Positions 31,201 through 64,000 of a DNA stretch of 64,000 nt are shown here, in pieces; the first letter of the stretch is position 1; the number at the start of each line of letters is the position of its first letter. A program made the translations under genes and the position numbers. The notes beneath the pieces were generated by a model, which did no database searches, was not told the DNA's origin, and was given only the letters and a program-made list of their open reading frames with translations. Source of the stretch: Macrostomum hystrix (Eukaryota > Animalia > Platyhelminthes); the NCBI GenBank assembly GCA_950097015.1, contig CATNEN010000034.1, positions 2,170,001-2,234,000 on the forward strand, written 5' to 3'.

Positions 31201-31986
31201 AAATCTTCACCGCCGTGTGCTGCCTACTGGTGGTGGCGCCGCCAATTAGTAGCGGCGTCTTCATGCCGCAACGCTGCATCTCCCTGCGAAATGAGCACGA
31301 ACACGAAGTGTATGAGCAATCACTGACTGAGGCGCAGTACAAATGTGTCAGGTAAACAAAGATGACACCCACCTAGCTACGTGAATCATCTCGTCCAGCG
31401 ATGGCGTAATCAGGCCGGACAATCCAATAATGTCGGCTTTCTCGTTTAAGGCCGTCTCAAGGATCCGCTCGCATGGCGTCATAACGCCCAGATCCACAAC
31501 TCGATAATTGTTGCAGCCGAGAACAACGCCGACAATATTCTTGCCAATGTCGTGCACATCGCCCTTGACCGTGGCCATGATCACAGTGCCGGCGAACTTT
31601 GGCTGCCCGTCATCAGCGGTGCCGTTCGCGGCGCACGCGGCCAATCGTTCGGCTTCCATGAAGGGCACCAGGTGACAGACGGCTTTCTTCATAACGCGCG
31701 CCGATTTGATCACCTGAGGCAGGAACATGCGGCCGGACCCGAATAGGTCGCCTACGATTGACATGCCGCGCATCAGGGGGCCTTCGATGATGTGCAGCGG
31801 CCTCGGATATCTGGAATGTGGATATATGTTCCAGGTGTGACAGATAGACAGACAGACAGCCACACAGTCAGACAGACCGACAGACAGAAGGACAGACAGA
31901 CACACAGACAGACTGACAGACAGACTGACAGACAGACAGACAGACACACAGACAGGCAGGCAGATAGACAGACAGACAGACAGAAG

Positions 31987-32046
<60 letters not shown>

Positions 32047-32049
32047 GTC

Positions 32050-32084
<35 letters not shown>

Positions 32085-32089
32085 GAGGC

Positions 32090-32138
<49 letters not shown>

Positions 32139-44764: not shown

Positions 44765-47700
44765 ATGAAAAATGCACAACCAATTAGTTGGTTTTGGCTC
44801 TGTCTTTTTGCACTGCTGTCGACTGGAAATGGTAAACGATTAATTTTATAGCTTCAACTTTCTATTGCTTCCTACTATCTATTGCTGCACGGAGCATCTC
44901 GGCTGCTTAAGCAAAGTTTTTAATTTCTAACCCAGAATTACCCAAGGGCTTGAATGCATTTCAATTACAGTTCAATTTCGTAATACTCCAAAGGGATCAT
45001 TTTCGAAACCAAAGGCAAATTAGCAAAAGAAAGACAAATCTATAAGCTATGCACTAAAGCGGTACCGTCTCAGAGGATCTACGAGCGTAGTTTAAGGGAG
45101 TGGTCGCGTTTCTCATTTAAATTATATAGCCCTCTTTAAGTGTCACAAAGTCAGTGCCTAATTTTTCTTACACATGCATATTAACACCAACATGAGCAGT
45201 TAGCAAAAGATTAACTGTGAGAGCAAGCTGTTGACCCTGTAAAGCGACTAGGTCAGGGTTCTCGGTTGAAGGTACAGTCGTTACAGCATAGTCAAGACAC
45301 GGGTGGTCGACATGCAGTTCCATCAAACAAGGGTCCACTCCGAAGTGGGTGGGCCGTCTGCAAGTTTGACGGCTCTTTTTCTGCAAAAGCTAATTATATT
45401 TGTTCCCTTCCCTTACCCCTTCACCTTGTGGAGACTAGACAGCTAGAATAAAAAACAAATGCAAAATGGAAAAACTACACTGCCAGTTCTCTTTTAGTTT
45501 GTTATTAGTCATCAGGTAGTGAGTTATTTCTTCACCAATTAGTGCCAATCTGCAAGATCGAGTTGCGGAGGCAGGAAAAAACGGAACGATATTCTAAAGC
45601 CCTTCAGTCCCTCGATCTATTTGTTGGACGAACTAACGTGCATCGAGCAAGGTCCACCATCACGAAAGTCAGGGTGGATGTAACGGGTTACAGAGTACTG
45701 TGTTAGTGTATGCTTACGATCGAATTACGAATGAATGACCTCCTCGATGGCTAGAAGTCGATTGTGCATCATTACCCAGAGCTACCCAACCATTTATCAT
45801 TAACATTATAAATAGGCACAACAATCGACACTGAAAATTCCTCGCAATAATTATTTTCAGCCAGCAACGTTTGTCCGCCGCTGAGCTTTGACCCAGCAAA
45901 AGAGATCTTTCATCTGGTGCCTCACGATGGATCGCCTGCGTATTTGCTGACAAACAGCTCGTTCAGCAACTACCAGCCGGGCGACAGTGTGCAGATGCAG
46001 TGCGCTGACGGCTACGTTGATTCGCGAACAATGCAACGTATGTTGTCACAAACTTCCATAGTCTGCCGGCTTCCGAGCCCAGGTGGAGTCACCACAACAA
46101 CTGCAGCAGTTCCAGCACCGGTATGGAGCAACTCGTCGCTTTCCTGCATGGGTGAGTGCAAACTTGAACTTAATATGTTTCATAGAGTTTTACGAACTAA
46201 TACTGCAGGAAAATCCTATTTCATTTAACGGCTTCGTAATCGCAATTATTTTCTTTCTAGAAGCAAAAAGAACACCAAATTGTATAGAATAAAAGCTATT
46301 TTCTTCGAGCTGTCTGGATTAAGTTCGCCAAACCAACTCGAATTCCACAGTTCACATATGTCCAGCAATCTCAGCGACAGACTCCTCGTTGAACAAGTCA
46401 GTTCTAGCAGCCGGTCTTGACCCGGCGAATCCCACATCCTATAGTACCAGCGTCGTGGTGCGGTGCATCCCATACGGTTACATACTACCTGGAAATCAGC
46501 GCGAGGCGGATACAGCAACCCTCAGGTGCGGCTACACAGGCTGGGATCTGACCTACTCCATTGAGTCCGTAGGTCGCAGTTTTCAGGTCTTCCCGGTCAT
46601 TGTTGCCGTGTCCGGCGCCCCAGCACCTACGTTCGGCGCATGCAACCGTGAGTCAAACCGTTTTTTAAAGGTCGCTATCACTGATTCTCTCTAGTGCAAG
46701 CAATCAACACTAAGCAATAGGAATAATTTTTCAGCGCTGGTGTGCACAAGCTTTTCAATCAATACGGCACAGCACAGGAAGCTGTCTACAAATGGCATTA
46801 CATCTAACGAATTCTCATTGAATTCGGAGCACAACATCACGTGCAAAAACGGTGTCGGCTATTTATTTGCTAACTCAAGCGAAGCCAACTGGCTGAACTT
46901 GCAGTGCAACTTTCTAGGCTGGAAAGCAACATTCTACATCGAAGGCGACGGTCGAGCAACCTCGTGGCAGACAAGCGTTCAGTTGAATCGCACGGCCACA
47001 TTGACGATTCCATCATGCTTTGGTAATTTCTTTTTTATGCGAAGCAAGCAAAGCAAGTGAATTGCTCCTGAAAGTGAAAAGTGAAAAGTAGCTAATAAAG
47101 CATTAGAAGCATCATTTTTCAGCATTTCAGTGTTCGATCCCAGTGGTTCTTGCAAATCCATCGCGAACTGTGAACAAGCCAGGCATTTCTACTAGTGACA
47201 TTACCTCTTTCGGAGCGAACATAACTTACAAGTGTCCAACAGAGTATGGACACAAATTTGCGAATAATTCTAACGAAGCTGACACTGTAAGCTTGGAGTG
47301 CACATTCTCTGGCTGGAAGACTGTCTACTCGATTCAATCAGAAGGCCGAATTCCAAATACGTTTTCTATGAATCTTCTGCCTCGACCTACTCAACCGGTA
47401 ATTGGAGCTTGCGACGGTAAGTGAAATTCCGTCACACATTGGGACGATAAAAGTTCCTGGAGAAGTTTTACTCGGTTGGTTCGTGGTGAAGCAATATAAT
47501 CCAAACAGAGTTTACAAAGCTTAAAACTTGAGTATAAGTTCAACTACTCAAACAAGTTAAAGAATGAATGAAGAAAAGAAAACCTTTGGGAGAAAAAGCA
47601 ATCGGCAATTCTTCCCTGTCATCTGATTACATTTCCTATGAATTGACCCAGTCATGCCTTGACTTATGCCATAGAAACCAAGGATTTTGTTCAAAATAGC

Positions 47701-50700
47701 AGTCAGCATGTATGAATTCCGGAACATGAACCTACCGTAAAAATGTTTTCCAGAACACTTATTGTATTTCCTGGGCAAAACAGGTGACACAAAGCTAAAG
47801 AGGGATGAATTATGCGCATTCAGTGAAAATTTTAATTTGAGCCGAGCGAAAATTGTGCTTAGATTAGAACGAAAAAACGGCCTTCAATCAAAATCTACAC
47901 GAATCGGTCATTTTTTCGTCCTAAGTGTTTAGTAGCCCCCCGGCGTGTGCGACATAATCTATTCGGCACATAATATTACATATTGTCGGATTTATAATCC
48001 TCCGTTTCTTAGTCTTGCGTTCCTTATTTACTTTCAGTCAATATGTCCTTTTAATCTAACACTTCAGCGGTTCTCTGCCACACTCCCATAAATTGGGACC
48101 CAGCAACACAGACTCAGAATGTAACTTTCCCTGGCGTTGATGCATTGAATAACCAGTCCGTTGACACTGTGCTGACTGTCTTGTGCAAGAACCAGTCCGA
48201 GGAATTCTACAAATACCGAAGCGAAAATCCAGCAAACAAAGCCGTCATTACTTGCTTGCCGTCTGGCAGATGGCTTGTGGAGCTTTATGCTATGGGTACT
48301 GGCTTCAGTCCCAAATTAAATGGACCATGGTGGTACATATCGTCAAATGTTCAACTGAATCCATGCCGTGGTAAGTTGATCAGAGCTTTAAATCGCGTCT
48401 TCAACCTTTGTCTTTTGACGCCTTTCTTCTACTTCAGTTGCTTTTTGAACTCGCAATTGTCGTATTCGTACTTTTTGGTTTCATTTGGCACACAGACAAA
48501 TAAGCAAATAGTTTCTATCTATAAACTAAATAAACTAAACGGTGGTGTAGTAAGAGGTCAGTTGTATGTTTTTTTTCTAGCCAAATACCTGTTTATATTG
48601 AAAGGATCAAAGCTCCTCGTTTCTAATCCTCTTATGATAGATCGAATATGTTGGGGAGACTTCTCATATCCGGGCACGCAATCAGCCTTGATCTCAACGG
48701 GGCCAAGCATTCATCGATATGAAGTGGTGAACGGCTGGTCAGTTCAGTTCAGGTGCCTCAGCGGATATCGAGGCGTCAATTTCCAGCTGGTTGTTAGCAA
48801 CGCCTGCAGTGTTGGTCTCGACTGGCAACAGTAAGGGCTGCAGGCAGTGTTTCTTGTTTGTATGCAATTTCGCTTTGGCGGAAATTGGTAGACTAAAGAA
48901 AAAAAGCTTTGTAATTTCAGAAAACTGGTGAAAGTCTGGAACAAAAACGCTGAATTCGACAATGGAAAAAACATTTGCAAATGTGAGGCCCTATAAAAGT
49001 ATTTAACAAATTTTCACGAAATCTCATTAAAATGCTTCCAAAAAACTTCAGATCAAAACTACTACCGCGGATGCTTCAAAATGAGCGAGATAGACAGTCA
49101 ACTAAATGGCGGCTTTAAGGAATTGATACCCACCAGCGCAAACACAGTTGATGCTTGCAGAGGCGAGTGCTACACGCGCAATTACACCCTGGCTGTTAAG
49201 AACTCCACCAGCTGTATGTGCTTGCAACCGAACACTACTGGTGCAATCGCTGACTTGAGTGACAATGCCACCCAGATTCTGCCATTCGTGCTTTCTACTG
49301 CGACTCGCGAGAAAAAAAACTACAACTGCATGGCTCAGTGCTCAGATGGCGAGTATTGTGGCGGTCTGAATGCAACCAGTGGTGACGCATTTTATTCGGT
49401 GTTCGATTCCTTTGGTAAGTGTATCGTTTGTGTGCTTTGTGCTTTGCAATTTAGACTGTCTAATAATTAATTACGCATGATTACGAGCTCGTAGAGTGTC
49501 CAGTGATTAAAAAACCTATTGTTTAAAAACCTAATGGGCCTGCTCATATATAGATGGGATGCAGCTGGGATGTTATTTAAAACAGGCAAATTATTCATTA
49601 AAAACTCATTTTTAGACGGTTGCTATCAGGTGAACGAAATTGATGCCCGCAAAATAGTCGACAATGTTACGATGGAGCTAATTGGTTCTTCGGCTTGCAA
49701 AGCGCATTGCAAACTGTTCCCACTTGCCGTGTATGCTGTCCTGCGGCTAAGCACATGCACCTGCCTTAGTGATGTGCTGGACAATGCTGTGGTGGCCCTC
49801 CCAGGTGGAACTACTTGCAATGTGTCATGCCCAACGACAGACGAGACCTGTGGAGGCACTGTCAATTATTATAACATCTACGCACTGTCTACCTACACGG
49901 ACAAGCCGCAGTCTTGCTATGAGTACAATGCTAAAAGGAAGATTTTCCAGTCTGGAAAGTACTTAGTCTACGGTAACATCAATACTACGACGGCTCCTGA
50001 CTTACCGAATGCGCTGTATTGCTATATGGTTGGTAAGTTTTGAGAACTGATCGACATAATTTGGTCACAGACTGCACTGTAGGTAGCCCCTCCTACTTGC
50101 CATCACTATAGATATGTAGCTCATGTGTGTTCGAAAATACTTTGCATGAGCTGTTCGAAACAAAAATACTCAGTTAAAAATTATTAAGGAAAGATAGCTC
50201 GTAGGACGAAAAACTTAGTTCTCATGAAACGAGTTGTTGATTTATTTAAGATATTGAACAACTGATTCATAAATTATATGCGCTCTTTTCATCTAAATGT
50301 GCTCGCTCCGTTAATATAAACTTTCCTAGAATAGCTCGTTACTTTCTTCGAGTCTTACTCGTATATAGACTTTTTAACTTAAAAAAGGTTAAAGTGTGTC
50401 GCCGCCATGTATCATAAAAATAACCAGATTGCTTAAATTAAGCTTTTTAGTGACCTACACAAAAGTGAGCAAATGTTTTAACCAACAGACGGCACAGCAT
50501 GCGAGTCTGGCTGGGTCGGTTTTCAGGGCTCATGCTATTCGTTGAACTTCCGTCCCGAAGAGCTGTGGAGTTTTGAAAGTTCTGTGGAGAACTGCGCGGC
50601 TAAGAACTCCGTGCTGTGGGCCCCGGATACATTGGACTATTTCTTCCTGTATTCAAACTTCTTAAAAAGTGAGTGCGGCAGTAACTTACTTCGAGTATTA

Positions 50701-53700
50701 GTACGAGCTATATTAAGTATTAAGTAAAGTTGAATACATTGGGGTGAAAAAAACAAATAACTGCTTGAAGACTGTTGTATACTATAACCACAGTGTCGTG
50801 GTTGAAAACCCATGAAAGGGATTATGCTATTGCTTACATGTTTTCACTGGACCATTGTTAACGTCTAAAACTAGTATTTCATTTTCAGCGTTTCATAAGT
50901 ATGACCCTTGGTAGCAGCATTGCGTAGCAGCAATGCATGAAGTTAAGTGAAAGACAAATGGTTTAAGCAGCAGCGGATATCCAAAAAGTGGTTCCGTACC
51001 CACTGGCCCAGGCCTCCGTATAAAAATAGCTTTATAAGACGGCTAGCTAAACTACAAATGTTTTCAGACAAGGATTTTTTTATTAATCATAAGTAGGCGC
51101 AGCAGTGCTGCAGCAGTTGCTCTGGCAGCCTGTCTATGGCTCGGACTGTGGCAAACCTGCATTCTATTTAATCATAAGTAGGCGCATCAATGCTGCAGCA
51201 GTTGCTCTGGCAGCCTGTCTATGGCTCGGACTGTGGCAAACCTGCATTCTATTTAATCATAAATATGATATCCAAAATATCCAATATCCAAAATATCCAA
51301 AATATCCAAAATATGATATCCAAAATAGGATATCCAAAAAGTGGTTCCGTACCCACTGGCCCAGGCCTCCGTATAAAAATAGCTTTATAAGACGGCTAGC
51401 TAAACTACAAATGTTTTCAGACAAGGATTTTTTCGGTCGGGAATGGAACATTGGACTCCACAGCTGGAAAGGCTTAATTCCAATAATGTTGGATGGCAGC
51501 ATCGCAGCCGCGAACTATGAGAATATTTACAATAAGATGTCGGCTCGGACGCTAAGTGGTCTGCACTGCTTCATATACGATGTCAGTTTTACGAATAAAA
51601 ATCTTCTATATAACGAGAAAGTAGAAGTCGGTATACTCTTCCACCGAATTAACTGCACCATGCATGTACCCAGACGGTCTATCTGTGTGAGACGTGAGTG
51701 CCTCTGCGTTTTTGTCTTAGTTTGGTAATATAGCTTTTTGCAGCCTAGTCAATCATAAGTACAGATTGATTGAATATTGCTAGTCACAATTTAATCATAA
51801 GTAGGCGCATCAATGCTGCAGCAGTTGCTCTGGCAGCCTGTCTATGGCTCGGACTGTGGCAAACCTGCATTCAATTTAATCATAAGTAGGCGCATCAATG
51901 CTGCAGCAGTTGCTCTGGCAGCCTGTCTATGGCTCGGACTGTGGCAAACCTGCATTCAATTTAATCATAAGTAGGCGCATCAATGCTGCAGCAGTTGCTC
52001 TGGCAGCCTGTCTATGGCTCGGACTGTGGCAAACCTGCATTCTATTTAATCATAAGTAGGTGCATCAATGCTGCAGCAGTTGCTCTGGCAGCCTGTCTAT
52101 GGCTCGGACTGTGGCAAACCTGCATTCAATTTAATCATAAGTAGGCGCATCAATGCTGCAGCAGTTGCTGAGGCAGCCTGTCTGTGGCTGGACTGTGGCA
52201 AACCTGCATTCAATTTAATCATAAGTAGGCGCATCAATGCTGCAGCAGTTGCTGAGGCAGCCTGTCTGTGGCTGGACTGTGGCAAACCTATATTGAAAAT
52301 ATAGAAGTCTTACTATAATGAAAGAATCTGACTGCTATTGCGCAAATTCGGCACGTTATTCTCAGTCATACCATCTCGCATGTTGCATTAGATGTAAGAT
52401 GTGGTACAAGTATGTCAGAGCACAGCTTCACAATGCATGCTGCGAAGTTTCATGACAGAAGAGGACAAAGAAACAATTTATAGGACAGAATTGCCAATAT
52501 TTGCGCTTCTAATTTTGGCTTCAACTCGCCAAACCGAAAAAATATTGGCTTCGTATCTTTAAACAAAAAAATTTAGGCAAAAGTTTTCCTGGCTGTCACA
52601 AGTACAACACGGCACTCAAGGCTCGGCTGTACGAGGCAGGTAGCTCTTTTGCGATGCAAACACGCACGCTGCAAGAGTGTCAGCAGGTGTGCAATCATCT
52701 CAGGCTTGCTGCTGCCATTGTTGAGGGACCAAATTGCACCTGCATTGACAATGACTCGCTGATGGAGAATTTCGAGCTGGTAAAGAGCGAGTCGGAAATT
52801 CGTACCCAATGCATGGTGAAGTGTCGCCCGGACTCTTACCAGTTCTGCGCCGGCACACAGCTGGGCAGTTTCTCCTATGCCTACGTCATCCTCAGTAAGT
52901 TTCGCACAATCTAAGAACTACTTTTGTCATTTTGCGGTGCTTTTTATCAAATATTTAGATGCATAGTCTAAATGAACTACTATAAAAGTTACAATGTTTG
53001 ATAGAGCGCTGAGTATAAGCTCATCACAAGCATTCCCAATGAACAAAATAGGACCAAATACCAGAGCATTTCACGTTTATAGTTAAAGCCTGGTCGCTGA
53101 TAGCCCGTGTGGAAAACAAGGCACCGGTGCTGCCGGGAGAGGCAATAAAATCTGTGTACGACATGCTGCTAAACTCTGCCCAGACATTTGGTACGAACAA
53201 TGACGCTGGCGAAAACCGCATGTACGGCGCCAGGTCGCCGCTGATTCTGTTGCCATGGCAGCCATTAAATTTGCCGAACCGAAAGTTTTTGTACGATAGA
53301 CCCGATATGAACATGAACTATTTCAACTTTATGTGGCGTCAAATGAACACTGGGAGTCGCAACATAACCGAGCTTGTTAACGTTACATTTGTAAATAATG
53401 ACGGCACAACTAGCTGGCTGCTGTTCGATGCGATCAACAAGACGTACTATAACTTCTTCACATCCGGCTCCCTCGTGAACACGTCTAGCGGGCCATTGGA
53501 CTCGTCGTACTCAGTCAACCAAAAGTCTGGAAACACTAAGTGAGCTTACGAGTCGCACTCTCTTACAATCTCTTACACTCTCTTACAATCTCTTACAATC
53601 TCTTACAATCTCTTACAATCTCTTACAATCTCTTACAATCTCTTACAATCTCTTACAATCTCTTACAATCTCTTACAATCTCTTACAATCTCTTACAATC

Positions 53701-56700
53701 TCTTACAATCTCTTACAATCTCTTACAATCTCTTACAATCTCTTACAATCTCTTACAATCTCTTACAATCTCTTACACTCTCTTACAATCTCTTACAATC
53801 TCTTACAATCTCTTACACTCTCTTACACTCTCTTACACTCTCTTACAATCTCTTACAATCTCTTACAATCTCTTACAATCTCTTACAATCTCTTACAATC
53901 TCTTACAATCTCTTACAATCTCTTACAATCTCTTACAATCTCTTACAATCTCTTACAATCTCTTACAATCTCTTACAAGCTCTTACAATCTCTTACAATC
54001 TCTTACAATCTCTTACAATCTCTTACAATCTCTTACAATCTCTTACAATCTCTTACAATCTCTTACAAGCTCTTACAATCTCTTACAATCTCTTACAATC
54101 TCTTACAATCTCTTACAATCTCTTACAATCTCTTACAATCTCTTACAATCTCTTACAATCTCTTACAATCTCTTACAATCTCTTACAATCTCTTACAATC
54201 TCTTACAATCTCTTACAATCTCTTACAATCTCTTACAATCTCTTACAATCTCTTACAATCTCTTACAATCTCTTACAATCTCTTACAATCTCTTACAATC
54301 TCTTACAATCTCTTACAATCTCTTACAATCTCTTACAATCTCTTACAATCTCTTACAATCTCTTACACTCTCTTACACTCTCTTACAATCTCTTACAATC
54401 TCTTACAATCTCTTACAATCTCTTACAATCTCTTACAATCTCTTACAATCTCTTACAATCTCTTACAATCTCTTACAATCTCTTACAATCTCTTACAATC
54501 TCTTACAATCTCTTACAATCTCTTACAATCTCTTACACTCTCTTACAATCTCTTACAATCTCTTACAATCTCTTACACTCTCTTACACTCTCTTACAATC
54601 TCTTACAATCTCTTACAATCTCTTACAATCTCTTACAATCTCTTACAATCTCTTACAATCTCTTACAATCTCTTACAATCTCTTACAATCTCTTACAATC
54701 TCTTACAATCTCTTACAATCTCTTACAATCTCTTACAATCTCTTACAATCTCTTACAATCTCTTACAATCTCTTACAATCTCTTACAATCTCTTACAATC
54801 TCTTACAATCTCTTACAATCTCTTACACTCTCTTACAATCTCTTACAATCTCTTACAATCTCTTACAATCTCTTACAATCTCTTACAATCTCTTACAATC
54901 TCTTACAATCTCTTACAATCTCTTACAATCTCTTACAATCTCTTACAATCTCTTACAATCTCTTACAATCTCTTACAATCTCTTACAATCTCTTACAATC
55001 TCTTACAATCTCTTACAATCTCTTACAATCTCTTACAATCTCTTACAATCTCTTACAATCTCTTACAATCTCTTACAATCTCTTACAATCTCTTACACTC
55101 TCTTACAATCTCTTACAATCTCTTACAATCTCTTACACTCTCTTACACTCTCTTACACTCTCTTACAATCTCTTACAATCTCTTACAATCTCTTACAATC
55201 TCTTACAATCTCTCGATACAATTCATAAATGTCGTTAAAATGAATCGCTCTTTACTTTTTCAGCGAGAAAATCTTCGGGATCACTAAAGGCACGTCTAGC
55301 GCAATCACATGCGATGGTAACAGTCCAGTCTCCGATCAGTCTTTTCCATTGGTTTACTTCGGTATCCTAGACAACAGGCTATCTCAGCTGTGCCTGAACG
55401 CATCAGCGTATTCTAAAAGCCCTCCCCTACCACTGCTGTTCTCAAGCTTTACTTCGCCCCAGGCCTATTCTGATGCGTCAACAGCCACGGCCGCAAGCAT
55501 GATGGTGTTCGCGAAAGCTTATTTGTACCAACCGTCGACTAGGGCCTCCTTATCCTGTGCTGAGGCAAATGTGTTACAGTTCTCCGCACCCAATGTCACC
55601 GTTGTGGCTGCGTACGGCACAGCTGTCACAAGTGTGCCCTGCCTGACTGCCACTGGTGAGAAGCATGTCTAGATTCATATTTTTATTCGCTCTTTATGAA
55701 TCAAGAAATGCAATAGCGGCCTTATCATACTGCGCTGGTTCAGCTAGATCTCGTTCTCGTAGTTTTGTCGAAACTCTAGGTTTTAATTTATTCATTGTGC
55801 AAACAAACGCTCATAATTTTCTTCTAACTTTCAATTACGAGTCTAAGTTCTATTGGCTACCAAATGAGTAATTCTCATGAAAGCAACCAAAAAATGAGAT
55901 GGGGCACTCAAACAAACTTGGATGCTTTCTGTAGACCTAGTCCTTTACTCTAGAACGAGTGCAAAGTGGATCTAATAGTGTGGAGAGCGAGGTGTGAAGA
56001 AAGTGGGTGGGGAGACGGAAAGATGTTTGGAGTGTACATAGACATCGACTGGTTGCTAACTTTTGAGGTTCCTTAATCAAAATGGGACATGTTGATAATT
56101 GCTTTTTTCGATCCACAATAGAGAAACTGCGAGCTGTGGGCCTGTTGCGCGCGAATTGGTTCTCTCATATTGACTTCGTTCTTAAATCCAAATTTAGTAC
56201 CAGTCCATCGCAGGTACTGATCCAAAATTCATTGGCAAACATCTTTCCTGCCACCGAAATTCAATTAAGTATAAAGTTCTGCTGCTTTTACAAGCTATTG
56301 TGGCACAAAATGCACTTTGGCTTTTGGGCAAGCAAGAAGAATAGGCAACAAGCTTCAAAATATGAACAGTCATACGTACATCAAAAAACTGTATTTTGTG
56401 GATTGTCCAAATGTTCACCATATAGACTTTTTAAGAGCTTTTGAAGTTATTAAAAGTAGCTATATTATTATCACTATTGTTATTATTATTATTCATATAT
56501 TATTCTTATTTTACATTGATTTCGATGTAAAATAGTTCGCTTTTATACCTCAGGCACGCCAGTAGAGCCTCCAACAGAGCCGAATGCGACTTGTGAATTC
56601 GGCTGGCTGAACGTAAATGGCACCTGCTTCCAGTTTACCGCCATGGCCATGAGTTACACCGAGGCCAATGCGTTCTGCAACTACTTCAATGCAACTTTGG

Positions 56701-59700
56701 CCACGCCATCGAATCAGTTCGTGCTTCAGGAGCTGATAAGAGCTTCTCGTTTCTATGGCTACACTCGCTTTGGCGGCGCCACTCAGGGCTACGGATTCTG
56801 GGTTGGCGTGGCTGACAGAACAGGTGTAAACCAGTTCGACTCGGCCAGTGGCGCACCGGTCACCTACCTACCAATGGCCTGCGATCTGACGGTTGGCCAA
56901 TTGGACTTCCGAGACCAGAGTTCTACCATCAACTGCTTCGAGCTGTTCACCGAGTCAAACCCACAGAGTCGAGAACTAGCTATGGCAGCCAACTGTTCCG
57001 TTTACACTCGCCTCGTATCTTCCACCGCGAACAGCAGCGCGGACGGCTTCCAGATCCAAGGCACCTCCGCCTATCGGCTGCAGAAGTGCAACGAACCTCT
57101 TGCTGGCGCTCTGTGCGAGCGGCCTGCCTACAAGCCAGGTAAAAATTTCGCGCGCCTGTTGCGTCGCTATTAAGTTGTCTTGCTTATTGTTTTAAGCACT
57201 CTGATTAAATAAATGAGACAATGAAACTGTTTAAGTATCTAATTACACGCGCATTTTGAGTTAAAAAGGACCTCTACCTGATCCAAGACCAACCACAATC
57301 TAAAATGAAGCGACTCGATTTTTTGCCTAAAAATATAGTTTTCTACGGCTGCTACCACATCGACTGGAAGGCCCTCACTAATACGGACCTGCCCGAGCAG
57401 GACCAGTGGCTACACGTGCGCCAGTGCCAGGCCATTTGCTACGCCGGCTTCAAGGAGTTCGCTGCCCTCACGCCGGATCGCTGCCTGTGCCTGAGCGAAA
57501 GCCAGCTGGTGAACTCCACCTACGTGCAAAATATTGACATCGAGCTGTGTCCCAACACCTGTTCTGGCAACCGATACCAGTCTTGTGGACAGCTTGGTGC
57601 AAAGTTTAACTTCTCGGTAGTCTATGCATCAGTCTACAGGATAGGTACCAAGTTTTCGTCTTAACCTTTTAAAATTCATATTAGCATTTTTTATACTTCC
57701 GAAATGTTAGTCAAAGTTTATTTTACTCGTTCAAAAGCCTTTTTAACACGATAAGCAATAAACTGGCAGTCAGAAAAGCCATTAAGTTAATCGGAAAGGC
57801 AGAGCACGTTTGTGTGGACATGCGGCTTCCGGTCCAAGGCAGGCAATGAATGGGAAGCAGGCTGCTTTTGTTTGACATACAAGCTAATCAGAAATTGTCT
57901 TACTGAACAAAAAACATTTAATTCAACTCAAAATTGTTTGATTTTGCTTTTGCCATTTGCATTATTAATTAAATTAGCAAATGAAGAATGAAAGAAAATA
58001 AAGTTCATTGCATCAAGGAAGAAGTAAGGAAATGATGAAAATTGTTATACGCACGCTACTATCGATCAGTGAATGCACTCAACGCATGCCGCACTCAAAT
58101 CTTCAGATCCCCAGGTTCAAGAGCTGTCAGCAGCTTCCTGCCTCGCTCTGTTTACAAAAGGTTTCTATCGCTCGGGCTTCTACATTGTCAACAATGAAAG
58201 AAAGTTCTGCTATTTGGCTGGTAAGCTGTCGTTGTGGCGCTGTGATTCTGATTGTGGTCATGGGGACGCTCGCTGTTTTCTGGGTCGCTACACTTTTATT
58301 AGATCCTTTTGGTTTGAGAAGCACATGGTTGAGATCAATGAAAAATGAATTTTTTTTGTTTAGACAACACGACGGCATGCAGCACCGGCTTCGCGTTCAA
58401 CGGCTCTTGCTTCGAGTTTACATCTCAGTTGGTTCCATTTGAACAGGCCAAGAACTCGTGCGCTGTGCGCGGCGGTCATTTGGCAAGCTTTCCAAACAAT
58501 GAGCACCTGGAATTTCTAACCGCAGTCTTGTCTAGTAAGTTCCGTAGCAAGGCTGATTAAATACCTTTGAAAGGTTTCCAGTAGGGCTAAGACAAAAATG
58601 AATGATACGACTGAGTGTTGACATGAAGTGCTGAGATTAAATTAACTAAGGATTCAATAAACAACATGCTACATCATGATTATGCTTTATTGCAGACTCA
58701 TACAGGCTCACCAATGCAACTCATTGGTGGTTGGGCCTCACGGATCCGAGGGGCCTCAAAACACCAATGTGGCTAAACGGTCGGCTCTACCTGAACAGCT
58801 ATTCGACGCGAACCAACAGCTACTTTCTCTTAGTTCGAGATACGAACTTTACTGTAGTGGATGCACCCCTAAACTACACTGGCAGCGTTAGTGGCACAGG
58901 TTTTAAGCTCATCAAGGACTTGTTAATTAACACAGCAACGAAGCGCACAGTTGGTGCCTTCGCCTGTCAGGTTGATAACAAAAATCCTGGCTGCCTGCAG
59001 AAGCAATGGGATCCGCATGCCAACAACGCCAGCAGTAGGACTTTCGTGTCTAGTTTCATGACTCTCAGCATGTGCAGATACCTGTGCTTTTCTGCTGATT
59101 TCCAATATAGCTCGGTGAACAATCGCACCTGTATGTGCATAAATGAGCTTTCGAAGGTGTTCAGCAGTACTACGGCGATTAACTACTTCCGTGTGCCTGA
59201 TAACGAGAATGGTACAGTGTTTCTAAACTGTGATATGCCCTGTCCGGGTAATAACGACCAGTTCTGTGGCTCATCGGCTGGCTACTGGAATGTGCACTTT
59301 TCAGGTAAGGGGATCTTAAAAAAGGGATGTCTTTTCTGTCACAGTAAAAATGGTTGTGCCAAGACCAATTAATGATGTCGTTAAGCCTTGTCGTTATTGT
59401 GTAATAATTGTGTCTGCATTCATCTCTACCATTGTCAGGAATTAGTTATTTTTTACCATTTTCTTTAGATGTACTGGCTGCGGAGAACTGCTCAGTTCTG
59501 TACGCTAATGACATTCATTACCGGAGCACGTATAAGCTATACAATTCAACCGCAAGTTCATTTTATTATGCGGAGTGCGGTTTCACAGGTATGCATTTTT
59601 ACAAGGAAAATTTTTACAAGTAAAATGACACCTCAGGCAAACTGAGGCCGAATGACGATTTTTCTAATTCCAGACGAAACACAATGTCCGACCGCTTGGT

Positions 59701-62700
59701 ACGCATTCAACGGAGCCTGTTTCACCACCGCGAATGCGTCCATGGCAGAACAAGAGGCCTGGCGTTTCTGTATGGATAATAACAGCTTTCCGGCGACATT
59801 TCGTAACAACAAAGACTACGACTTTGTGCAGAACCTGACTTCACTCCTGCCGTATCATGCAAAATTTGCAAACTGGCTGCTTGGTTATACCAAACTGGAT
59901 CAGCCGCTTTCACAATCACCAGTCATTAGCGTCGCTGCTGACTTTGTCTTGTACGCTGGAGAGCCTGGCACAGTTGGGCAGAGTTCGTACAATCAGGGGA
60001 CGTTCGCTAGATACTACTTTTCAAATGGGTCGGTCTATAAGTCAGCTGTGACCTATAACTCAGTGCCCATTTGCTTGATTCCTTATGGTAAGTATCTTCC
60101 AGGCATTCAAAGTAAAAAATTCTGCATCTTTTGCTCACCTACTCATTGCGAAAGTGCTTATCGCACTTAGTGCTTATCGTATTATATCATAAATGGAGTT
60201 CGGCAGCATAGACTCAGGTGTGAAAGAGCTCTAGAATTTCTAAAAAAAGTATCATTGCTGAATCCTCCTGTGGCCTCTATTCAGACTTCGTCAGTTGTGA
60301 ACCTGTGTTAGACCCAGCGAACACAGTCAGCATGCCACAGCCAATGCTGGGGATCAACCTGCCCCAGACGTGCCTGCAGATGTGTCGCACCGGGGCCTAC
60401 AAATACGCGGGCCTTGCAGCCAGCCAGTGCAAGTGCACTAATGCCAGTGTGGGCGCTGCGTCCAGCGGTGCTCTGTCTCAGTGCTTGCAGAACTGCGACA
60501 GAGTCCCGTCTTCCTCTTGTGGCTCAGCGTCTGGAAACCTTTCCTGGTACAACACAGGTACGCTACCAGTAGTTAAGTTTTGTCAATGAATAATCTGTAT
60601 TGTTTTCGCATAATTAAACTCACAAATCGCTCTGTCATCGGTAGGAATCCTACAGAACGGAATGTCGAGCTCTTGTCACGACATTCTGGGGCTCTTCATT
60701 CAAACTGAGGGACCCCACCGGCTGCAGATCCGAGAGGGCGGGGCGCTCTACACTGCTAGCTGCTTTAACGATGGGTATGAACGAATAGCGTCGTCACTTT
60801 CGCACGCCTAGCTCTCACAAGCCTTCCCTGAGTGCTCTAGGCTTCGCATTTCGCATTCTCATATTTTAATATGTGGATTCGTTTCTAGCTCATTCTTGAA
60901 GATATTTACTTATTTCCATGTGAAAATGTGTTTTATTACTTCATGCATTGCAGGCTAAATACCACTTCAGTACTGATATCTGGTGAAACTGAGGTAAAAA
61001 CCTCGTTTGAAAACGAGACGGTAATCACAGGGTACATCTTTAAAGGTATGAGTTCCTCTTGAATTCTTTACAAATCGGAAATATTGCTGTGCTAAAGAGG
61101 CCAATTAAACTATTTTTTTCCAGACGATGATGCCATTAAGACAGTGCAGCTCTCATTCAGTAACTGGGTACTGCTCAATTCTACAGTGAACGTCATTGCT
61201 TTTTCTAAACAGGTCTGTTCTGCTTGGGGCCAAAAATTGCTCTTTAAACGTTCATAGCGATCTTAAATTCTACTCTATTGCTAAAATAAACCTTTCAGAA
61301 ATATCCTGAGCTCGGAACATTTTTCATGCCGAAGATGGTGCCGCTGCCAATGCCGGTCGTTACTAGATCGTGGCTTAAACTGTCAAAGCTCAGTACTGAC
61401 CAAAAATTCAGTTCCCAGGCAAAGATGACATTAATTGGATATCCGTATTCTAGGTTCAATGGTAATGGCCATGGCTTAGTTATGGTTTAGTTATGAATAA
61501 ACAAAAAACTCGAAAGGATAAAGCTGTTCTACTTGCCTTTGCCATTATATTTCAGTCACCAACAGCTACATTGGCTGTCACTACATTCAAACGGACCCTC
61601 GTGTCGTGGACACCATCATGCCCTACCTGGGGCCGCGCGGAGCTGCAGTCGCTGGAGCCAACGAGAGCAGCTGCATTGACGCCTGCAAGGAGTGGGGGCT
61701 GCCCTACGCTGTGATACAGCAGCGGCTGAGCGACCCGCTAACTGGTAAATAAATACAGTACATTATATTTTACTATGGGGATGGTGTTTTGTAGCGGAAA
61801 ATAATCGTGGGCGAAATTAATTTCAGGCAACGACGCCACGAATTTTGAGCACTGCGGCTCAACTCAGTGGAACTACCTACCGCCATTGAACGTATGCGTC
61901 ACTCTACACAAGAACATGAGGCTGGTGGAGAGCCAAAACTTGACGAGCTCCGGCCCCGGCCCGAATACTCTGACTTTCACCGCTCCTGCCCGCGCCCTGT
62001 GTCAGGAAATCGGAGGCTCGTTGCTTGTCTTGTCCGATCAAGACACGGCAATGAGCCAGATGCTCTATAGTAAGCTATTTAATCCTTCTGGTAGGTATTT
62101 TTGAAGAAAAGAAGCATTAATGTTCTGATTTTTATTATAGAGCAACTTCACCAATTCCACCGAGGACCGTGGATATTTCTGTACAGCAGCCCAGGTATGA
62201 CCAGCCTTGAAACTGAGGACATCCAATGCTGTCCCTAATTACAATTATTTATAACTTTTTAGATAACAAAGTCAGGGGGTTTTCTTCCGGTCTGAGTGGT
62301 CCGATTTTCTACTTTACCCTGACTAGCAACCCGGCACACAATCTAGACATCAGCGGTGCAGTTCTAACCCTGGTCCGGACCATATCTTACCCTGTGCTCT
62401 GCCAGAAGCGTGAGTTGCACTGCAGATGTTTTTTAAAAACAGTTTTCCCAAATCAAACTTCTCGCTAATTCTTGCGAGGCAAACGTTTCTTTCAGCTGAC
62501 AACAGCAGCGCGTACAGCCCTCTTGTGTCCAGTGCAGTCTATACAGGTGCGAATATCATGCAAACAAAGCTTTTAGCATATCTACTCGTTGTACTCATAG
62601 TAGCGTGTAACATTAATTCAGACAAGTGTTTTTGCGCCGTGGACTACGCCTATTACGGTCGGGCCCTCACAGATGAGGTCTGCTCCACTCCGTGCACGAC

Positions 62701-63074
62701 AAGTTTGGCCGAGTGCCGCAACTTCACAGCTCGCGTGCATCGGACCTGGAGTAAGAGTGGCACTCATATACTTGTATTTATTATTAGACCAAGGTCTTCT
62801 GAAACGGAATGAATCACAGAGAGACATTTCTGTAAAACTGCTCCTTCAGATTTGGCCTGCTTTAACATCCCTGTTGTTATGAATGCGAGTCTGGTTGGCC
62901 CCTCACCGCCCCACCTGCGGGTCGGCGAGACAGTCCAGATGGCCTGCGCCTACGGCTACGAGTTTCTGCCGGATGTGATAGACGTCCGAAAATACACCTG
63001 CGATCAGACTGGAAGGTTCGCTTATGTCATCGGCAGTTCATGGTTCTATGAGAAGGATGTAGACGCTTGCGCTA
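44765..63074 (+). CDS. Giant modular extracellular protein (CCP-like x7, WSC x7, C-type lectin x5, fibrinogen-like and discoidin-like modules), at least 2765 aa, continues beyond window
   Basis: 34 frame-compatible exons (8296 nt): 44765-44831 (signal peptide MKNAQPISWFWLCLFALLSTGN), 45861-46151, 46351-46647, 46735-47022, 47123-47416, 48068-48370, 48641-48830, 48921-48982, 49052-49414, 49616-50032, 50489-50668, 51421-51693, 52577-52894, 53083-53539, 55264-55655, 56554-57138, 57339-57644, 58107-58220, 58364-58534, 58696-59304, 59469-59588, 59674-60087, 60285-60557, 60645-60774, 60954-61045, 61124-61212, 61299-61461, 61556-61744, 61827-62069, 62141-62194, 62263-62409, 62496-62546, 62622-62750, 62850-63074. 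WSC cues YxGC..C...C..CxC..C...C..CG; CTL cues C..GW..F.GSCY, WIGL-like and terminal xCE/CQ. Domain calls are by eye. Confidence 0.85.
51081..51258. repeat. 85-bp satellite, 2 copies upstream of exon 12 of the giant gene
   Basis: TTAATCATAAGTAGGCGCATCAATGCTGCAGCAGTTGCTCTGGCAGCCTGTCTATGGCTCGGACTGTGGCAAACCTGCATTC(A/T)AT. Confidence 0.9.
51790..52285. repeat. 85-bp satellite, about 6 copies downstream of exon 12
   Basis: Same unit as 51081-51258; period 85 (51791, 51876, 51961). Confidence 0.93.
53557..55212. repeat. 10-bp satellite (TCTTACAATC)n, about 165 copies, filling one intron
   Basis: Lies between the donor at 53540 and the acceptor at 55263; variants TCTTACACTC and TCTTACAAGC. Confidence 0.98.
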
Positions 63075-63377: not shown

Positions 63378-64000
63378 GGGAGAGCGGTAGTGGCAGAGCG
63401 GTTATCGCGTTTGCCTCTAGCACCAAGGTCCCTGAGCTCGATTCCGCGGCGAGGCCAAATTAATTTGAGGGCGCAGCCGTATAGAGAAGGCTTAGCGGCT
63501 TGTCCCGCAATTTACACTTGTGAGGTGACAACATATACAACACAGTGAAAGTGTACACAGCCTGACGATGAGAAAGTAAGGGCAGATGTACACACCTGTT
63601 TGAGTGTTTGCCTGCGTACAGTATCTGTGTGCGTAACTACATAATGGCACAAGACGATAGGGAACCACTGAAGCTAAAGCAAAGTATTTGAAGTACACAT
63701 AGAAATCTCTAAAATAGGGGAACAGCTGCCCTGAAGCTAAACGTTAAAGGATATATATTTATTTTTTTATTCCTGGCGTCCCTTGTGCTTTTGATGCTCT
63801 TACTTTTAACACCTTTGCTCTTCCCTTCCCAGCTCAATAGTTAATTCTTACAAAACTACGTTTACTTTTGTCGAGTAAAATATTGTCAGAAAATATAAAT
63901 AAAGAAGTCAGCACCCATACGAGCGTAGATGGCGTGTGCGTTTTATTAATAATAACAATAATAGCGTGTGTGCTCAGGAGTCAGCGAAATGGGCAGAATT
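63378..64000 (+). mobile_element. tRNA-derived SINE, family 2, interrupted by about 320 bp of AT-rich DNA
   Basis: Head 63378-63640 (GTGGCAGAGCGG...GAGCTCGATTCCGCGGCGAGGCC). The continuation GTGTGTGCTCAGGAGTCAGCGAAATGGGCAGAATT reappears at 63965-64000, matching 12835-12870. Confidence 0.72.

What the first reader, a model, noticed from the sequence alone, without database searches (positions are those of the whole stretch)
44765..63074. Giant (at least 2765 aa) CCP/WSC/C-type-lectin mosaic protein built from phase-1 exon modules: candidate new pattern-recognition or PKD1-like receptor
Seen order: SP-6xCCP-WSC-WSC-mini-CTL-WSC-FBG-like body-CTL-WSC-mini-CTL-WSC-mini-CTL-WSC-mini-discoidin-like-WSC(N)-CTL-WSC(C)-CCP, continuing beyond the window. 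30 of 34 introns are phase 1, so most modules can be skipped in frame. Known: WSC binds beta-glucan-type glycans in fungal sensors and occurs with a CTL domain in the polycystin-1 ectodomain; CTL and CCP are glycan-recognition and complement modules. Inference: a multivalent glycan-sensing or adhesion protein with large splice-isoform potential. I do not recognise this architecture from any named family.
Basis: partly seen in the sequence, partly recalled or inferred. Interest (0 to 1): 0.75.

Follow-up and report, generated by a model that had tools for sequence, protein, structure and literature searches.

The report
Giant secreted flatworm lectin-mosaic gene
This is a real, very long flatworm (Macrostomum-type) gene for a secreted protein of about 4,500 residues built from sugar-binding-type and complement-type modules; it belongs to a small genus-restricted family with no name and is not a polycystin-like membrane receptor.

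Summary
My own exon model gives 34 exons and 2,770 codons from ATG 44765 to 63074.

The gene runs on for 22 more CCP exons and ends about 10.7 kb beyond the window. That makes 56 exons and roughly 4,500 aa.

WSC, C-type-lectin-like and CCP identities hold at profile level. The "discoidin-like" block has lead-level support only. The "FBG-like body" is an orphan domain.

Three collinear tandem paralogs lie on another contig, at 38-51% identity. A Macrostomum lignano UniProt fragment named only "WSC domain-containing protein" shows the same layout. No other relative of the exon tested was found among 1.84 billion proteins.

No exon encodes a transmembrane segment, REJ, GPS or PLAT. Two paralogs stop right after the last CCP. 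The 7TM reading frame downstream is a separate rhodopsin-type receptor gene.

The best reading is therefore a secreted, heavily glycosylated, multivalent binding scaffold, not a PKD1-like receptor. The lectin domains lack the canonical calcium/sugar motifs.

Expression is unverified. One late exon carries a 1-nt frameshift.

The scan had already noted the nested lectin-in-WSC on this same window, and other WSC mosaics elsewhere in this genome.

The parts
44765..44831 (+). Exon 1: start codon and signal peptide (22 codons + 1 nt, phase-1 donor)
   Evidence: Read directly. A hydrophobic core follows MKNAQP, and the donor is GTAAAC. Used as the start of the model.
45861..46151 (+). Exon 2: CCP1
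   Evidence: Pfam Sushi 16.6 bits. It is part of the CCP profile that hits CR1 at 1.4e-41. Phase 1-1.
46351..46647 (+). Exon 3: CCP2
   Evidence: Conserved in paralogs. Phase 1-1.
46735..47022 (+). Exon 4: CCP3
   Evidence: tblastn against paralogs at 2e-15. Phase 1-1.
47123..47416 (+). Exon 5: CCP4
   Evidence: tblastn against paralogs at 8e-11. Phase 1-1.
48068..48370 (+). Exon 6: CCP5
   Evidence: tblastn against paralogs at 5e-8. Phase 1-1.
48641..48830 (+). Exon 7: CCP6, first part (phase 1 in, 2 out)
   Evidence: Conserved in all paralogs at 42-56% identity, E 1e-17 to 1e-22. Acceptor chosen.
48921..48982 (+). Exon 8: CCP6, last part with the fourth Cys (phase 2 in, 1 out)
   Evidence: Conserved in paralog Pc, E 5e-7.
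49052..49414 (+). Exon 9: WSC1 (with a long internal insertion)
   Evidence: Pfam WSC 20.1 bits, E 7.6e-4, over model positions 1-81. Paralogs at 35-48% identity.
49616..50032 (+). Exon 10: WSC2 followed by mini1 (about 40 aa, two Cys)
   Evidence: Pfam WSC 26.9 bits. Mini alignment A3.
50489..50668 (+). Exon 11: CTL1, N-terminal half
   Evidence: Paralogs at 39-44% identity, E 1e-13.
51421..51693 (+). Exon 12: CTL1, C-terminal half, lying between two blocks of an 85-bp minisatellite
   Evidence: Missed by the dynamic programme. Found through conservation in all three paralogs, E 1e-14 to 1e-17. Splice sites.
52577..52894 (+). Exon 13: WSC3
   Evidence: Pfam WSC 28.5 bits.
53089..53539 (+).
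   Evidence: Three paralog copies at 47-49% identity. Nothing in Pfam, PDB sequences, the atlas or the word search. AF2 pLDDT 42.
55264..55655 (+). Exon 15: orphan module X-b (130 aa, 4 Cys), phase 2 in
   Evidence: Paralogs at about 30% identity, E 1e-7. No Pfam hit.
56554..57138 (+). Exon 16: CTL2 (whole C-type-lectin-like domain)
   Evidence: Lectin_C 19.0 bits. The CTL profile hits DEC-205 at 7e-21 and PLA2R at 3e-18.
57339..57644 (+). Exon 17: WSC4
   Evidence: Pfam WSC 32.6 bits. Donor chosen.
58107..58220 (+). Exon 18: mini2
   Evidence: Paralogs at 47-54% identity.
58364..58534 (+). Exon 19: CTL3, N-terminal half
   Evidence: Pfam Lectin_C 24.2 bits, above the 22.6 cut-off.
58696..59304 (+). 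Exon 20: CTL3 C-terminal half plus WSC5
   Evidence: Pfam WSC 38.2 bits. It matches M. lignano A0A1I8IWD3 at 2e-26.
59469..59588 (+). Exon 21: mini3
   Evidence: Paralogs at 56-75% identity.
59674..60087 (+). Exon 22: CTL4
   Evidence: Paralogs at 47-51% identity, E 1e-35 to 1e-47. In profile A4.
60285..60557 (+). Exon 23: WSC6
   Evidence: Pfam WSC 30.0 bits.
60645..60774 (+). Exon 24: mini4 (phase 1 in, 2 out)
   Evidence: Conserved in all paralogs, E 1e-8 to 1e-10.
60954..61045 (+). Exon 25: discoidin-like block, part a
   Evidence: Placed from splice and coding scores. It lines up by eye with the spliced M. lignano protein.
61124..61212 (+). Exon 26: discoidin-like block, part b (phase 1 in, 0 out)
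   Evidence: Weakly conserved in Pc, E 0.002.
61299..61461 (+). Exon 27: discoidin-like block, part c (phase 0 in, 1 out)
   Evidence: Conserved in all paralogs, E 1e-5 to 1e-13. The equivalent M. lignano stretch resembles F5/8 type C models, TM 0.56-0.61, which is a lead only.
61556..61744 (+). Exon 28: WSC7, N-terminal half
   Evidence: Aligns to positions 1-46 of a 94-position HMM built from the family's own WSC domains.
61827..62090 (+). Exon 29: CTL5 (nested in WSC7), N-terminal part
   Evidence: Paralogs at 33-46% identity. Present in the M. lignano protein.
62141..62194 (+). Exon 30: CTL5, short middle exon (motif HRGPW)
   Evidence: A 12-15-residue motif is conserved in all three paralogs. 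Frame and splice sites worked out.
62263..62409 (+). Exon 31: CTL5, C-terminal part
   Evidence: Strong splice sites. Pattern shared with the paralogs and with the end of the M. lignano protein.
62496..62546 (+). Exon 32: possible 17-codon linker, the least certain exon
   Evidence: Splice scores only. No conservation found.
62622..62750 (+). Exon 33: WSC7, C-terminal half
   Evidence: Aligns to positions 48-82 of the family WSC HMM. Paralogs at 56-64% identity.
62850..63074 (+). Exon 34: CCP7, last exon inside the window
   Evidence: Pfam Sushi 17.1 bits. Paralogs at 42-51% identity.
51083..52289 (.). Intronic 85-bp minisatellite in two blocks (51083-51262 and 51787-52289) on either side of exon 12
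   Evidence: Tandem Repeats Finder.
53559..55213 (.). Intronic 10-bp repeat (TCTCTTACAA, about 165 copies) between X-a and X-b
   Evidence: Tandem Repeats Finder.
63380..64000 (.). Dispersed short repeats (MITE-like) inside intron 34
   Evidence: Dozens of copies at 78-87% identity across the genome.

Best explanation
What it is (shown). One 30-kb, 56-exon gene encodes a secreted, cysteine-rich, heavily N-glycosylated protein of about 4,500 residues. The layout is:
- a signal peptide;
- a stalk of six CCP modules;
- a central binding region of five cassettes that each end in a C-type-lectin-like domain plus a WSC domain. The cassettes are preceded by a small two-Cys 'mini' module, an orphan 280-aa module, or a discoidin-like module. 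In the last cassette the lectin domain is nested inside the WSC domain;
- a tail of 23 CCP modules, mostly in A-B-C triplets. Type A is a CCP that keeps only one of the two disulfides.

How it most likely works (inferred). There is no membrane anchor. I take it to be an extracellular scaffold or cross-linker: the CCP strings act as extended spacers, and the many lectin-like, WSC and discoidin-like heads bind several copies of a glycan-rich or protein ligand at once. Candidate ligands are mucus, gland secretions, egg or seminal material, or microbial surfaces.

Binding through the classical calcium site of C-type lectins is unlikely, because the motifs are absent.

Family (shown). It is the divergent fourth member of a family seen so far only in Macrostomum.
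For: Gene model and phases.

Module identities:
- WSC.
- CTLD.
- CCP.
- Type A CCP: folds at pLDDT 90.9, and its nearest solved folds are sushi domains (IL-15R-alpha, factor H, CD55; probability 0.94-0.98, TM 0.54-0.61).
- Discoidin-like: lead only.

Secreted, no anchor:
- signal peptide;
- no TM-like stretch in any exon, with 198 Cys and 133 N-X-S/T sequons;
- paralogs Pb and Pc stop directly after the last CCP, and nothing conserved lies downstream.

Real and constrained: 55 of 56 exons are open, all introns are GT-AG, and three paralogs are collinear exon by exon.

Same layout in a spliced M. lignano prediction.

Genus-restricted: only 5 hits among 1.84 billion representatives; the other four are poly-WSC proteins (some with PAN or thyroglobulin-1 modules) of unrecorded origin.

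Context: WSC is massively expanded in this genome. WSC proteins are known Macrostomum prostate/seminal-fluid candidates (PMC6953679, PMC4490696).
Against: - No transcript or protein from this gene exists in the collections I could search, so expression, exon usage and the true 3' end are unverified.
- Exon 54 (L005:275-491) has a 1-nt insertion relative to all paralogs. It puts a TAG at the donor.
- The last exon has lost the final Cys and the stop codon seen in paralogs Pb and Pc.
- No ligand, tissue or binding activity is known.
- The lectin domains are non-canonical.
- About 9% of the protein (modules X and D) has no securely identified fold.
Confidence: 0.6

Rival explanations
1. A soluble pattern-recognition molecule of innate immunity. 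The many lectin-like heads agglutinate or opsonise microbes, and in-frame skipping of phase-1 exons diversifies the repertoire.
For: - The module types (CCP, CTLD, WSC, discoidin-like) all occur in invertebrate immune lectins (established knowledge).
- 51 of 55 introns are phase 1 if the frameshifted exon 54 is given its family phase, so most exons could be skipped in frame.
- Four diverged paralogs exist.
Against: - No expression or induction data.
- The CTLDs lack the calcium/sugar motifs.
- Phase-1 symmetry is the norm for shuffled extracellular modules and is no evidence of alternative splicing.
- Four paralogs is a small repertoire.
Confidence: 0.2
2. A polycystin-1/REJ-like or other membrane receptor whose transmembrane part lies in downstream exons.
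For: - WSC and a C-type lectin domain co-occur in the polycystin-1 ectodomain (established knowledge).
- A 7TM reading frame lies 2.4 kb beyond the last CCP exon.
Against: - All 22 downstream exons are CCP modules.
- No REJ hit on this contig, although the genome has many elsewhere.
- No TM-like segment.
- Two paralogs stop after the last CCP, and none has a GPCR behind it.
- The 7TM frame is a rhodopsin-family gene with its own ATG immediately before TM1.
- The dynamic programme could only link to it through micro-exons of 14-46 nt with no conservation.
Confidence: 0.03
3. A recently disabled or unexpressed gene copy, that is, a decaying paralog.
For: - Frameshift in exon 54.
- The conserved terminal Cys-Lys-stop is lost.
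- No public protein or transcript.
- Repeats and minisatellites fill several introns.
Against: - 55 of 56 exons (about 13.3 kb of coding sequence) remain open, with intact GT-AG sites and conserved Cys patterns.
- The single lesion lies near the 3' end in a skippable phase 1-1 exon, and could be an assembly error.
- This copy is the oldest branch of the family, so it has been kept for a long time.
Confidence: 0.1

Closest known systems
Macrostomum lignano UniProt A0A1I8IWD3, 'WSC domain-containing protein' (779-aa fragment)
   Same: It has the same run of modules: CTL, WSC, mini, CTL, WSC, mini, discoidin-like block, WSC N-half, nested CTL. Identity to this gene is 39-63% exon by exon, and 55-68% to paralog Pa.
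   Different: It is a truncated automatic prediction that lacks both CCP regions, the orphan X module and part of one CTL. It is closer to the contig-38 paralogs than to this gene. It is uncharacterised.
Polycystin-1 (PKD1) and sea-urchin REJ proteins
   Same: An extracellular WSC domain and a C-type lectin domain in one giant ectodomain.
   Different: No LRR, PKD repeats, REJ, GPS/GAIN, PLAT or transmembrane domains. WSC and CTL are repeated five to seven times. The flanks are long CCP strings. The protein is secreted rather than membrane-bound.
CCP-string proteins with lectin domains: selectins, lecticans (G3 domain), SVEP1/polydom, complement receptor 1, factor H
   Same: Long tandem CCP arrays on phase-1 exons. 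CTLD and CCP occur in the same chain. The CCP profile hits CR1, factor H and DAF.
   Different: No EGF modules and no TM. It has WSC, mini, X and discoidin-like modules, and a recurring CCP subtype with only two Cys.
Macrostomum WSC proteins: prostate/seminal-fluid candidates such as Mlig-pro46 and RNA815_80.4, and the WSC-PAN arrays noted elsewhere in this genome
   Same: The same genus-level expansion of WSC as a secreted-protein module (PMC6953679; PMC4490696).
   Different: Those are small proteins of one to a few WSC domains with canonical sequences (60-80 bits). Here the WSC domains are divergent (20-38 bits) and embedded in a 4,500-aa mosaic.
Macrostomum adhesive proteins Mlig-ap1 and Mlig-ap2
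   Same: Giant, cysteine-rich, secreted flatworm proteins with carbohydrate- and protein-binding modules, including one C-type lectin domain in ap1 (PMC6410801).
   Different: Those proteins carry Lys/Arg-rich regions and vWD, TIL, EGF, LDLa and TSP-1 modules. The paper reports no WSC or sushi domain. No sequence relationship was found.

Membership tests
Polycystin-1 / REJ family | REJ module | tested here: not met
   A six-frame search of the whole genome with PF02010 finds 43 matches, none on contig 34 and none near the paralog cluster.
Polycystin-1 / REJ family | GPS/GAIN site, PLAT domain and multi-pass transmembrane region | tested here: not met
   All exons after 63074 are CCP modules. 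No exon has a 19-residue stretch with mean hydropathy typical of a TM helix. Paralogs end in a stop after the last CCP. GPS and PLAT models were not searched separately.
Polycystin-1 / REJ family | WSC and C-type lectin domains in the ectodomain | tested here: met
WSC domain (PF01822) | Match to the family model at or above the curated score, with the eight-Cys pattern | tested here: met
   Four domains score above 27.8 bits (28.5, 30.0, 32.6, 38.2). Two score just below (26.9, 20.1). The seventh is split, and its halves align to complementary halves of the family's own HMM.
C-type lectin-like domain (CTLD) | Sequence match to CTLD models or solved CTLDs | tested here: met
   Lectin_C 24.2 bits against a cut-off of 22.6. 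The profile of CTL2/CTL4 and their paralogs hits DEC-205 at 7e-21, PLA2R at 3e-18 and NKG2D at 1.5e-9, mainly over the N-terminal half.
Calcium-dependent carbohydrate-binding C-type lectins | EPN or QPD triplet plus WND motif at calcium site 2 | tested here: not met
   There is no QPD or WND in any CTL exon. The only EPN lies in the linker before the first Cys of CTL2.
CCP / sushi domain | About 60-80 aa with four Cys, a conserved Trp and the sushi fold | tested here: met
   The profile of 29 exons hits only CCP proteins (CR1 at 1.4e-41). 11 of 29 hit Pfam Sushi singly. The two-Cys type A folds at pLDDT 90.9, and its nearest solved folds are sushi domains, though Foldseek E is only 0.3 for so small a domain.
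Fibrinogen-related domain | Match of the 'mini' modules and the 'FBG-like body' to fibrinogen C-terminal domain models | tested here: inconclusive
   No Pfam Fibrinogen_C hit. The best PDB hits of the mini profile are the first 33 residues of the angiopoietin-1 and FGL1 fibrinogen domains, in register, but at E 0.5-2. The 'body' (X-a) matches nothing, and its model is unreliable.
Discoidin / F5/8 type C domain | Match to PF00754 or to the galactose-binding-like jelly-roll fold | tested here: inconclusive
   No Pfam hit even at E 10 in the contiguous M. lignano protein. The ESM Atlas finds F5/8 type C clusters by features (0.87) and by structure (TM 0.56-0.61 over 123 residues). However, the Atlas model of that protein has a mean pLDDT of only 0.45.

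The most novel reading that the evidence does not exclude
The family is a macrostomid invention: giant secreted recognition scaffolds whose near-uniform phase-1 exon design is actually used. Skipping or choosing among lectin-WSC cassettes and CCP triplets would generate many isoforms with different valency and reach. The lectin domain nested inside a WSC domain would form a composite binding site not seen elsewhere.
Probability: 0.07. Interest if true: 0.65.

Novelty: new variant of a known kind. Interest (0 to 1): 0.4.

Why it matters
- **A clean exon-shuffling example.** About 50 self-contained phase-1 modules of at least six kinds sit in one gene. They include a conserved domain-inside-a-domain (a lectin domain within WSC) and a CCP subtype that has dropped one disulfide yet is predicted with high confidence to keep the sushi fold.
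- **WSC beyond small proteins.** The WSC expansion of Macrostomum, so far discussed for small prostate and seminal-fluid proteins, also reaches giant mosaics.
- **A testable model.** The family is an unannotated target in a flatworm model (M. lignano) where in situ hybridisation and RNAi are routine, so its role in secretion, adhesion, reproduction or defence can be tested directly.
- **Limits.** It answers no long-standing question. Giant lineage-specific lectin mosaics are common in invertebrate genomes.

Tried and rejected
1. A purely statistical gene model missed four real exons: the CTL1 C-half, mini4, one discoidin-like part and the short CTL5 exon. It also ran on into the neighbouring GPCR through unsupported micro-exons. 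Adding a conservation bonus over-extended and fused exons. The final model was curated by hand from both.
2. A candidate TM helix just after the last CCP exon (ext 74761-74858, L005:1761-1858) was rejected. It is T-rich intron-like sequence behind a consensus donor, has basic residues on the wrong side, and is not conserved.
3. Word searches with exon 20, with exon 14 and with the M. lignano fragment found nothing new.
4. The ESM Atlas gave nothing for X-a. AF2 on X-a with four sequences gave pLDDT 42, so I ran no fold search on it.
5. Papers: no paper combines WSC, C-type lectin and sushi in one described protein. The Macrostomum adhesive proteins are unrelated in design.
7. All searches were exon by exon by reference, so whole-architecture look-ups (InterPro/CDART style) were left out.
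Full report
**Organism and place**

The window is contig 34, bases 2,170,001-2,234,000, of a 220-Mb, 42-contig assembly. The sequence is eukaryotic, with short GT-AG introns, minisatellites and dispersed short repeats. Earlier notes of this scan call the genome a Macrostomum flatworm, and one names M. hystrix. I did not test the species. The only close public relative of the gene is a Macrostomum lignano protein, which fits. Nothing suggests human DNA.

**Checking the observation**

Stop-free frames on the + strand from 44.7 kb onward hold a long series of cysteine-rich pieces.

Pfam on these pieces, by reference, gave:
- WSC at five places (26.9-38.2 bits against a cut-off of 27.8);
- Lectin_C at two places (24.2 and 19.0 bits);
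- weak Sushi at both ends;
- a sixth WSC at 20.1 bits once the exon was cut correctly.

I then built an exon model. A dynamic programme over splice-site matrices and codon usage was trained on the gene itself. I corrected it by hand wherever conservation in paralogs showed exons it had missed or mis-cut.

The curated model has 34 exons between ATG 44765 and 63074, with 8,311 coding nt (2,770 aa). It has 34 GT-AG introns, 30 of them phase 1.

**Extent of the gene**

I fetched 30 kb downstream. The gene continues with 22 more exons, each one CCP-like module in phase 1-1, up to ext 74,591 (L005:1591).
- The pattern is C, then A-B-C, then A-C, then five A-B-C triplets, then a final A.
- Types B and C have the four CCP cysteines.
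- Type A keeps only the first and third.

Whole gene: 56 exons and about 13.5 kb of coding sequence, or roughly 4,500 aa.

**Module identities**

| Module | Result |
|---|---|
| CCP (29 exons) | The profile hits only CCP proteins among PDB sequences: CR1 1.4e-41, factor H 9e-17, CR2, DAF, beta2-glycoprotein I. 11 exons hit Pfam Sushi singly. |
| CCP type A | Weak alone by sequence. With 39 copies from this gene and its paralogs, AF2 gives pLDDT 90.9. The nearest solved folds are sushi domains (IL-15R-alpha, factor H, CD55; TM 0.54-0.61; probability 0.94-0.98; E only about 0.3 for this small domain). |
| C-type lectin-like | A profile of two domains plus paralogs hits DEC-205 (7e-21), PLA2R and NKG2D, mostly over the N-terminal half. 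None of the five domains has EPN/QPD or WND at the sugar/calcium site. |
| Split WSC | An HMM of the family's own WSC domains aligns positions 1-46 to exon 28 and 48-82 to exon 33, with a lectin-like domain on exons 29-31 between them. The M. lignano protein and all paralogs share this nesting. |
| 'mini' modules (about 35-40 aa, two Cys) | Best matches are the first 33 residues of the angiopoietin-1 and FGL1 fibrinogen domains, in register, but at E 0.5-2. This is a lead, not a finding. |
| 'discoidin-like' block | No Pfam hit even at E 10. In the contiguous M. lignano protein, residues 446-600 (mini4 plus the block) resemble F5/8 type C clusters in the ESM Atlas by features (0.87) and by structure (TM 0.56-0.61), on a low-confidence Atlas model. 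Again a lead. |
| 'FBG-like body' (exons 14-15, 280 aa) | No relative in Pfam, PDB sequences, the Atlas or the word search. Its AF2 model is unreliable. It is an orphan module with a strongly conserved core motif. |

**Relatives**

Exon 14 has three further copies in the genome, all on contig 38. I fetched 160 kb there. It holds three tandem paralogs, collinear with this gene exon by exon at 35-70% identity.
- The contig-38 copies are 47-76% identical to each other.
- They are 59-64% identical to the M. lignano fragment.
- They are only 38-51% identical to this gene.

So this gene is the oldest branch. If that fragment is an orthologue of the contig-38 cluster, the family predates the split of the two species.

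A full HMMER scan of 1.84 billion representative proteins with exon 20 found five hits. One is the M. lignano fragment A0A1I8IWD3 (2e-26). The other four are poly-WSC proteins, some with PAN or thyroglobulin-1 modules, whose origin I did not look up. Within the reach of that one exon, the family is restricted to Macrostomum.

WSC itself is hugely expanded in this genome. At least 150 six-frame matches score 60-82 bits, in large tandem arrays. In M. lignano, WSC proteins are prostate/seminal-fluid candidates (PMC6953679, PMC4490696).

**Receptor or secreted protein?**

- No exon has a TM-like stretch. The exons together hold 198 Cys and 133 N-X-S/T sequons.
- In paralogs Pb and Pc the reading frame stops right after the last CCP cysteine. 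Nothing downstream is conserved among the four loci.
- REJ domains occur at many loci in the genome, but none lies on contig 34 or near the paralogs.
- The 7TM frame 2.4 kb downstream is a rhodopsin-family receptor (7tm_1, 7e-33). Its own ATG sits directly before TM1. It could be joined to the gene only through unsupported micro-exons.

The PKD1-like reading is therefore rejected. The protein is most likely secreted.

**Caveats**

Expression and isoforms are therefore untested.
- Exon 54 has one extra base compared with all paralogs, which creates a TAG at its donor. Skipping the exon would keep the frame.
- The last exon has lost the terminal Cys-Lys-stop seen in paralogs Pb and Pc. It either reads on for 34 codons or splices to unsupported micro-exons.

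**Verdict**

It encodes a giant secreted mosaic of known extracellular modules in an arrangement that has no named family, shared by four paralogs here and by at least one M. lignano gene.

It most likely acts as a multivalent extracellular binding scaffold. An immune-recognition role is possible. A PKD1-like receptor role is not supported.

It is a new variant of a known kind, of moderate interest. The main points are the nested lectin-in-WSC domain, the one-disulfide CCP subtype and the orphan X module.

Noticed in passing
window 50947-52289: Exon 12 (51421-51693) sits between two blocks of the same 85-bp minisatellite. About 100 nt just upstream of the exon, including its acceptor and first few codons, is duplicated at about 50980-51090, directly before the first block. 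This creates a decoy acceptor.
   Followed up: partly
window 53559-55213: A very regular 10-bp repeat (TCTCTTACAA, about 165 copies, 98% matches) fills most of intron 14. It is open in all three forward frames, which gives spurious ORFs of 560-600 aa.
   Followed up: partly
L005:3986-5765 (+), 13-15 kb beyond the window end: A rhodopsin-family GPCR gene (7tm_1, 7e-33) with at least one intron. Its ATG lies immediately before TM1, as in adenosine-type receptors. It is a separate gene from the mosaic.
   Followed up: partly
G000 contig 38, 12,446,001-12,606,000 (loci L011-L026, minus strand): Three tandem paralogs of the mosaic gene. Their CCP tails differ in length: I counted 13, 12 and 6 type-A modules. 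This suggests recent gain or loss of whole CCP triplets.
   Followed up: partly
window 63380-64000, and ext 66740-67100, 69000-69310, 70300-70700, 73880-74310: One family of short dispersed repeats (MITE-like, with dozens of copies at 78-87% identity genome-wide) has inserted into at least five introns of the gene. Some copies are open in frame, and they misled the conservation-weighted gene model.
   Followed up: partly
window 38127-40607 (+): Intact 827-aa pol-type ORF of an LTR retrotransposon (protease, reverse transcriptase, RNase H), 4 kb upstream of the gene's start.
   Followed up: no
window 31351-34663 (-): Exons of a cobalamin-dependent methionine synthase gene (S-methyl_trans, Pterin_bind and B12-binding domains).
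   Followed up: no
window 20916-21743 (+): A 276-aa ORF with a Sushi hit above Pfam's cut-off (22.8 bits). It may belong to another CCP-containing gene upstream in the same window.
   Followed up: no
G000 contigs 1 (8.45-8.50 Mb), 7 (5.915-5.935 Mb) and 39 (10.68-10.70 and 12.92-12.94 Mb): Very large tandem arrays of canonical WSC domains (65-82 bits each). The contig 7 array consists of near-identical units of about 1.7 kb.
   Followed up: no
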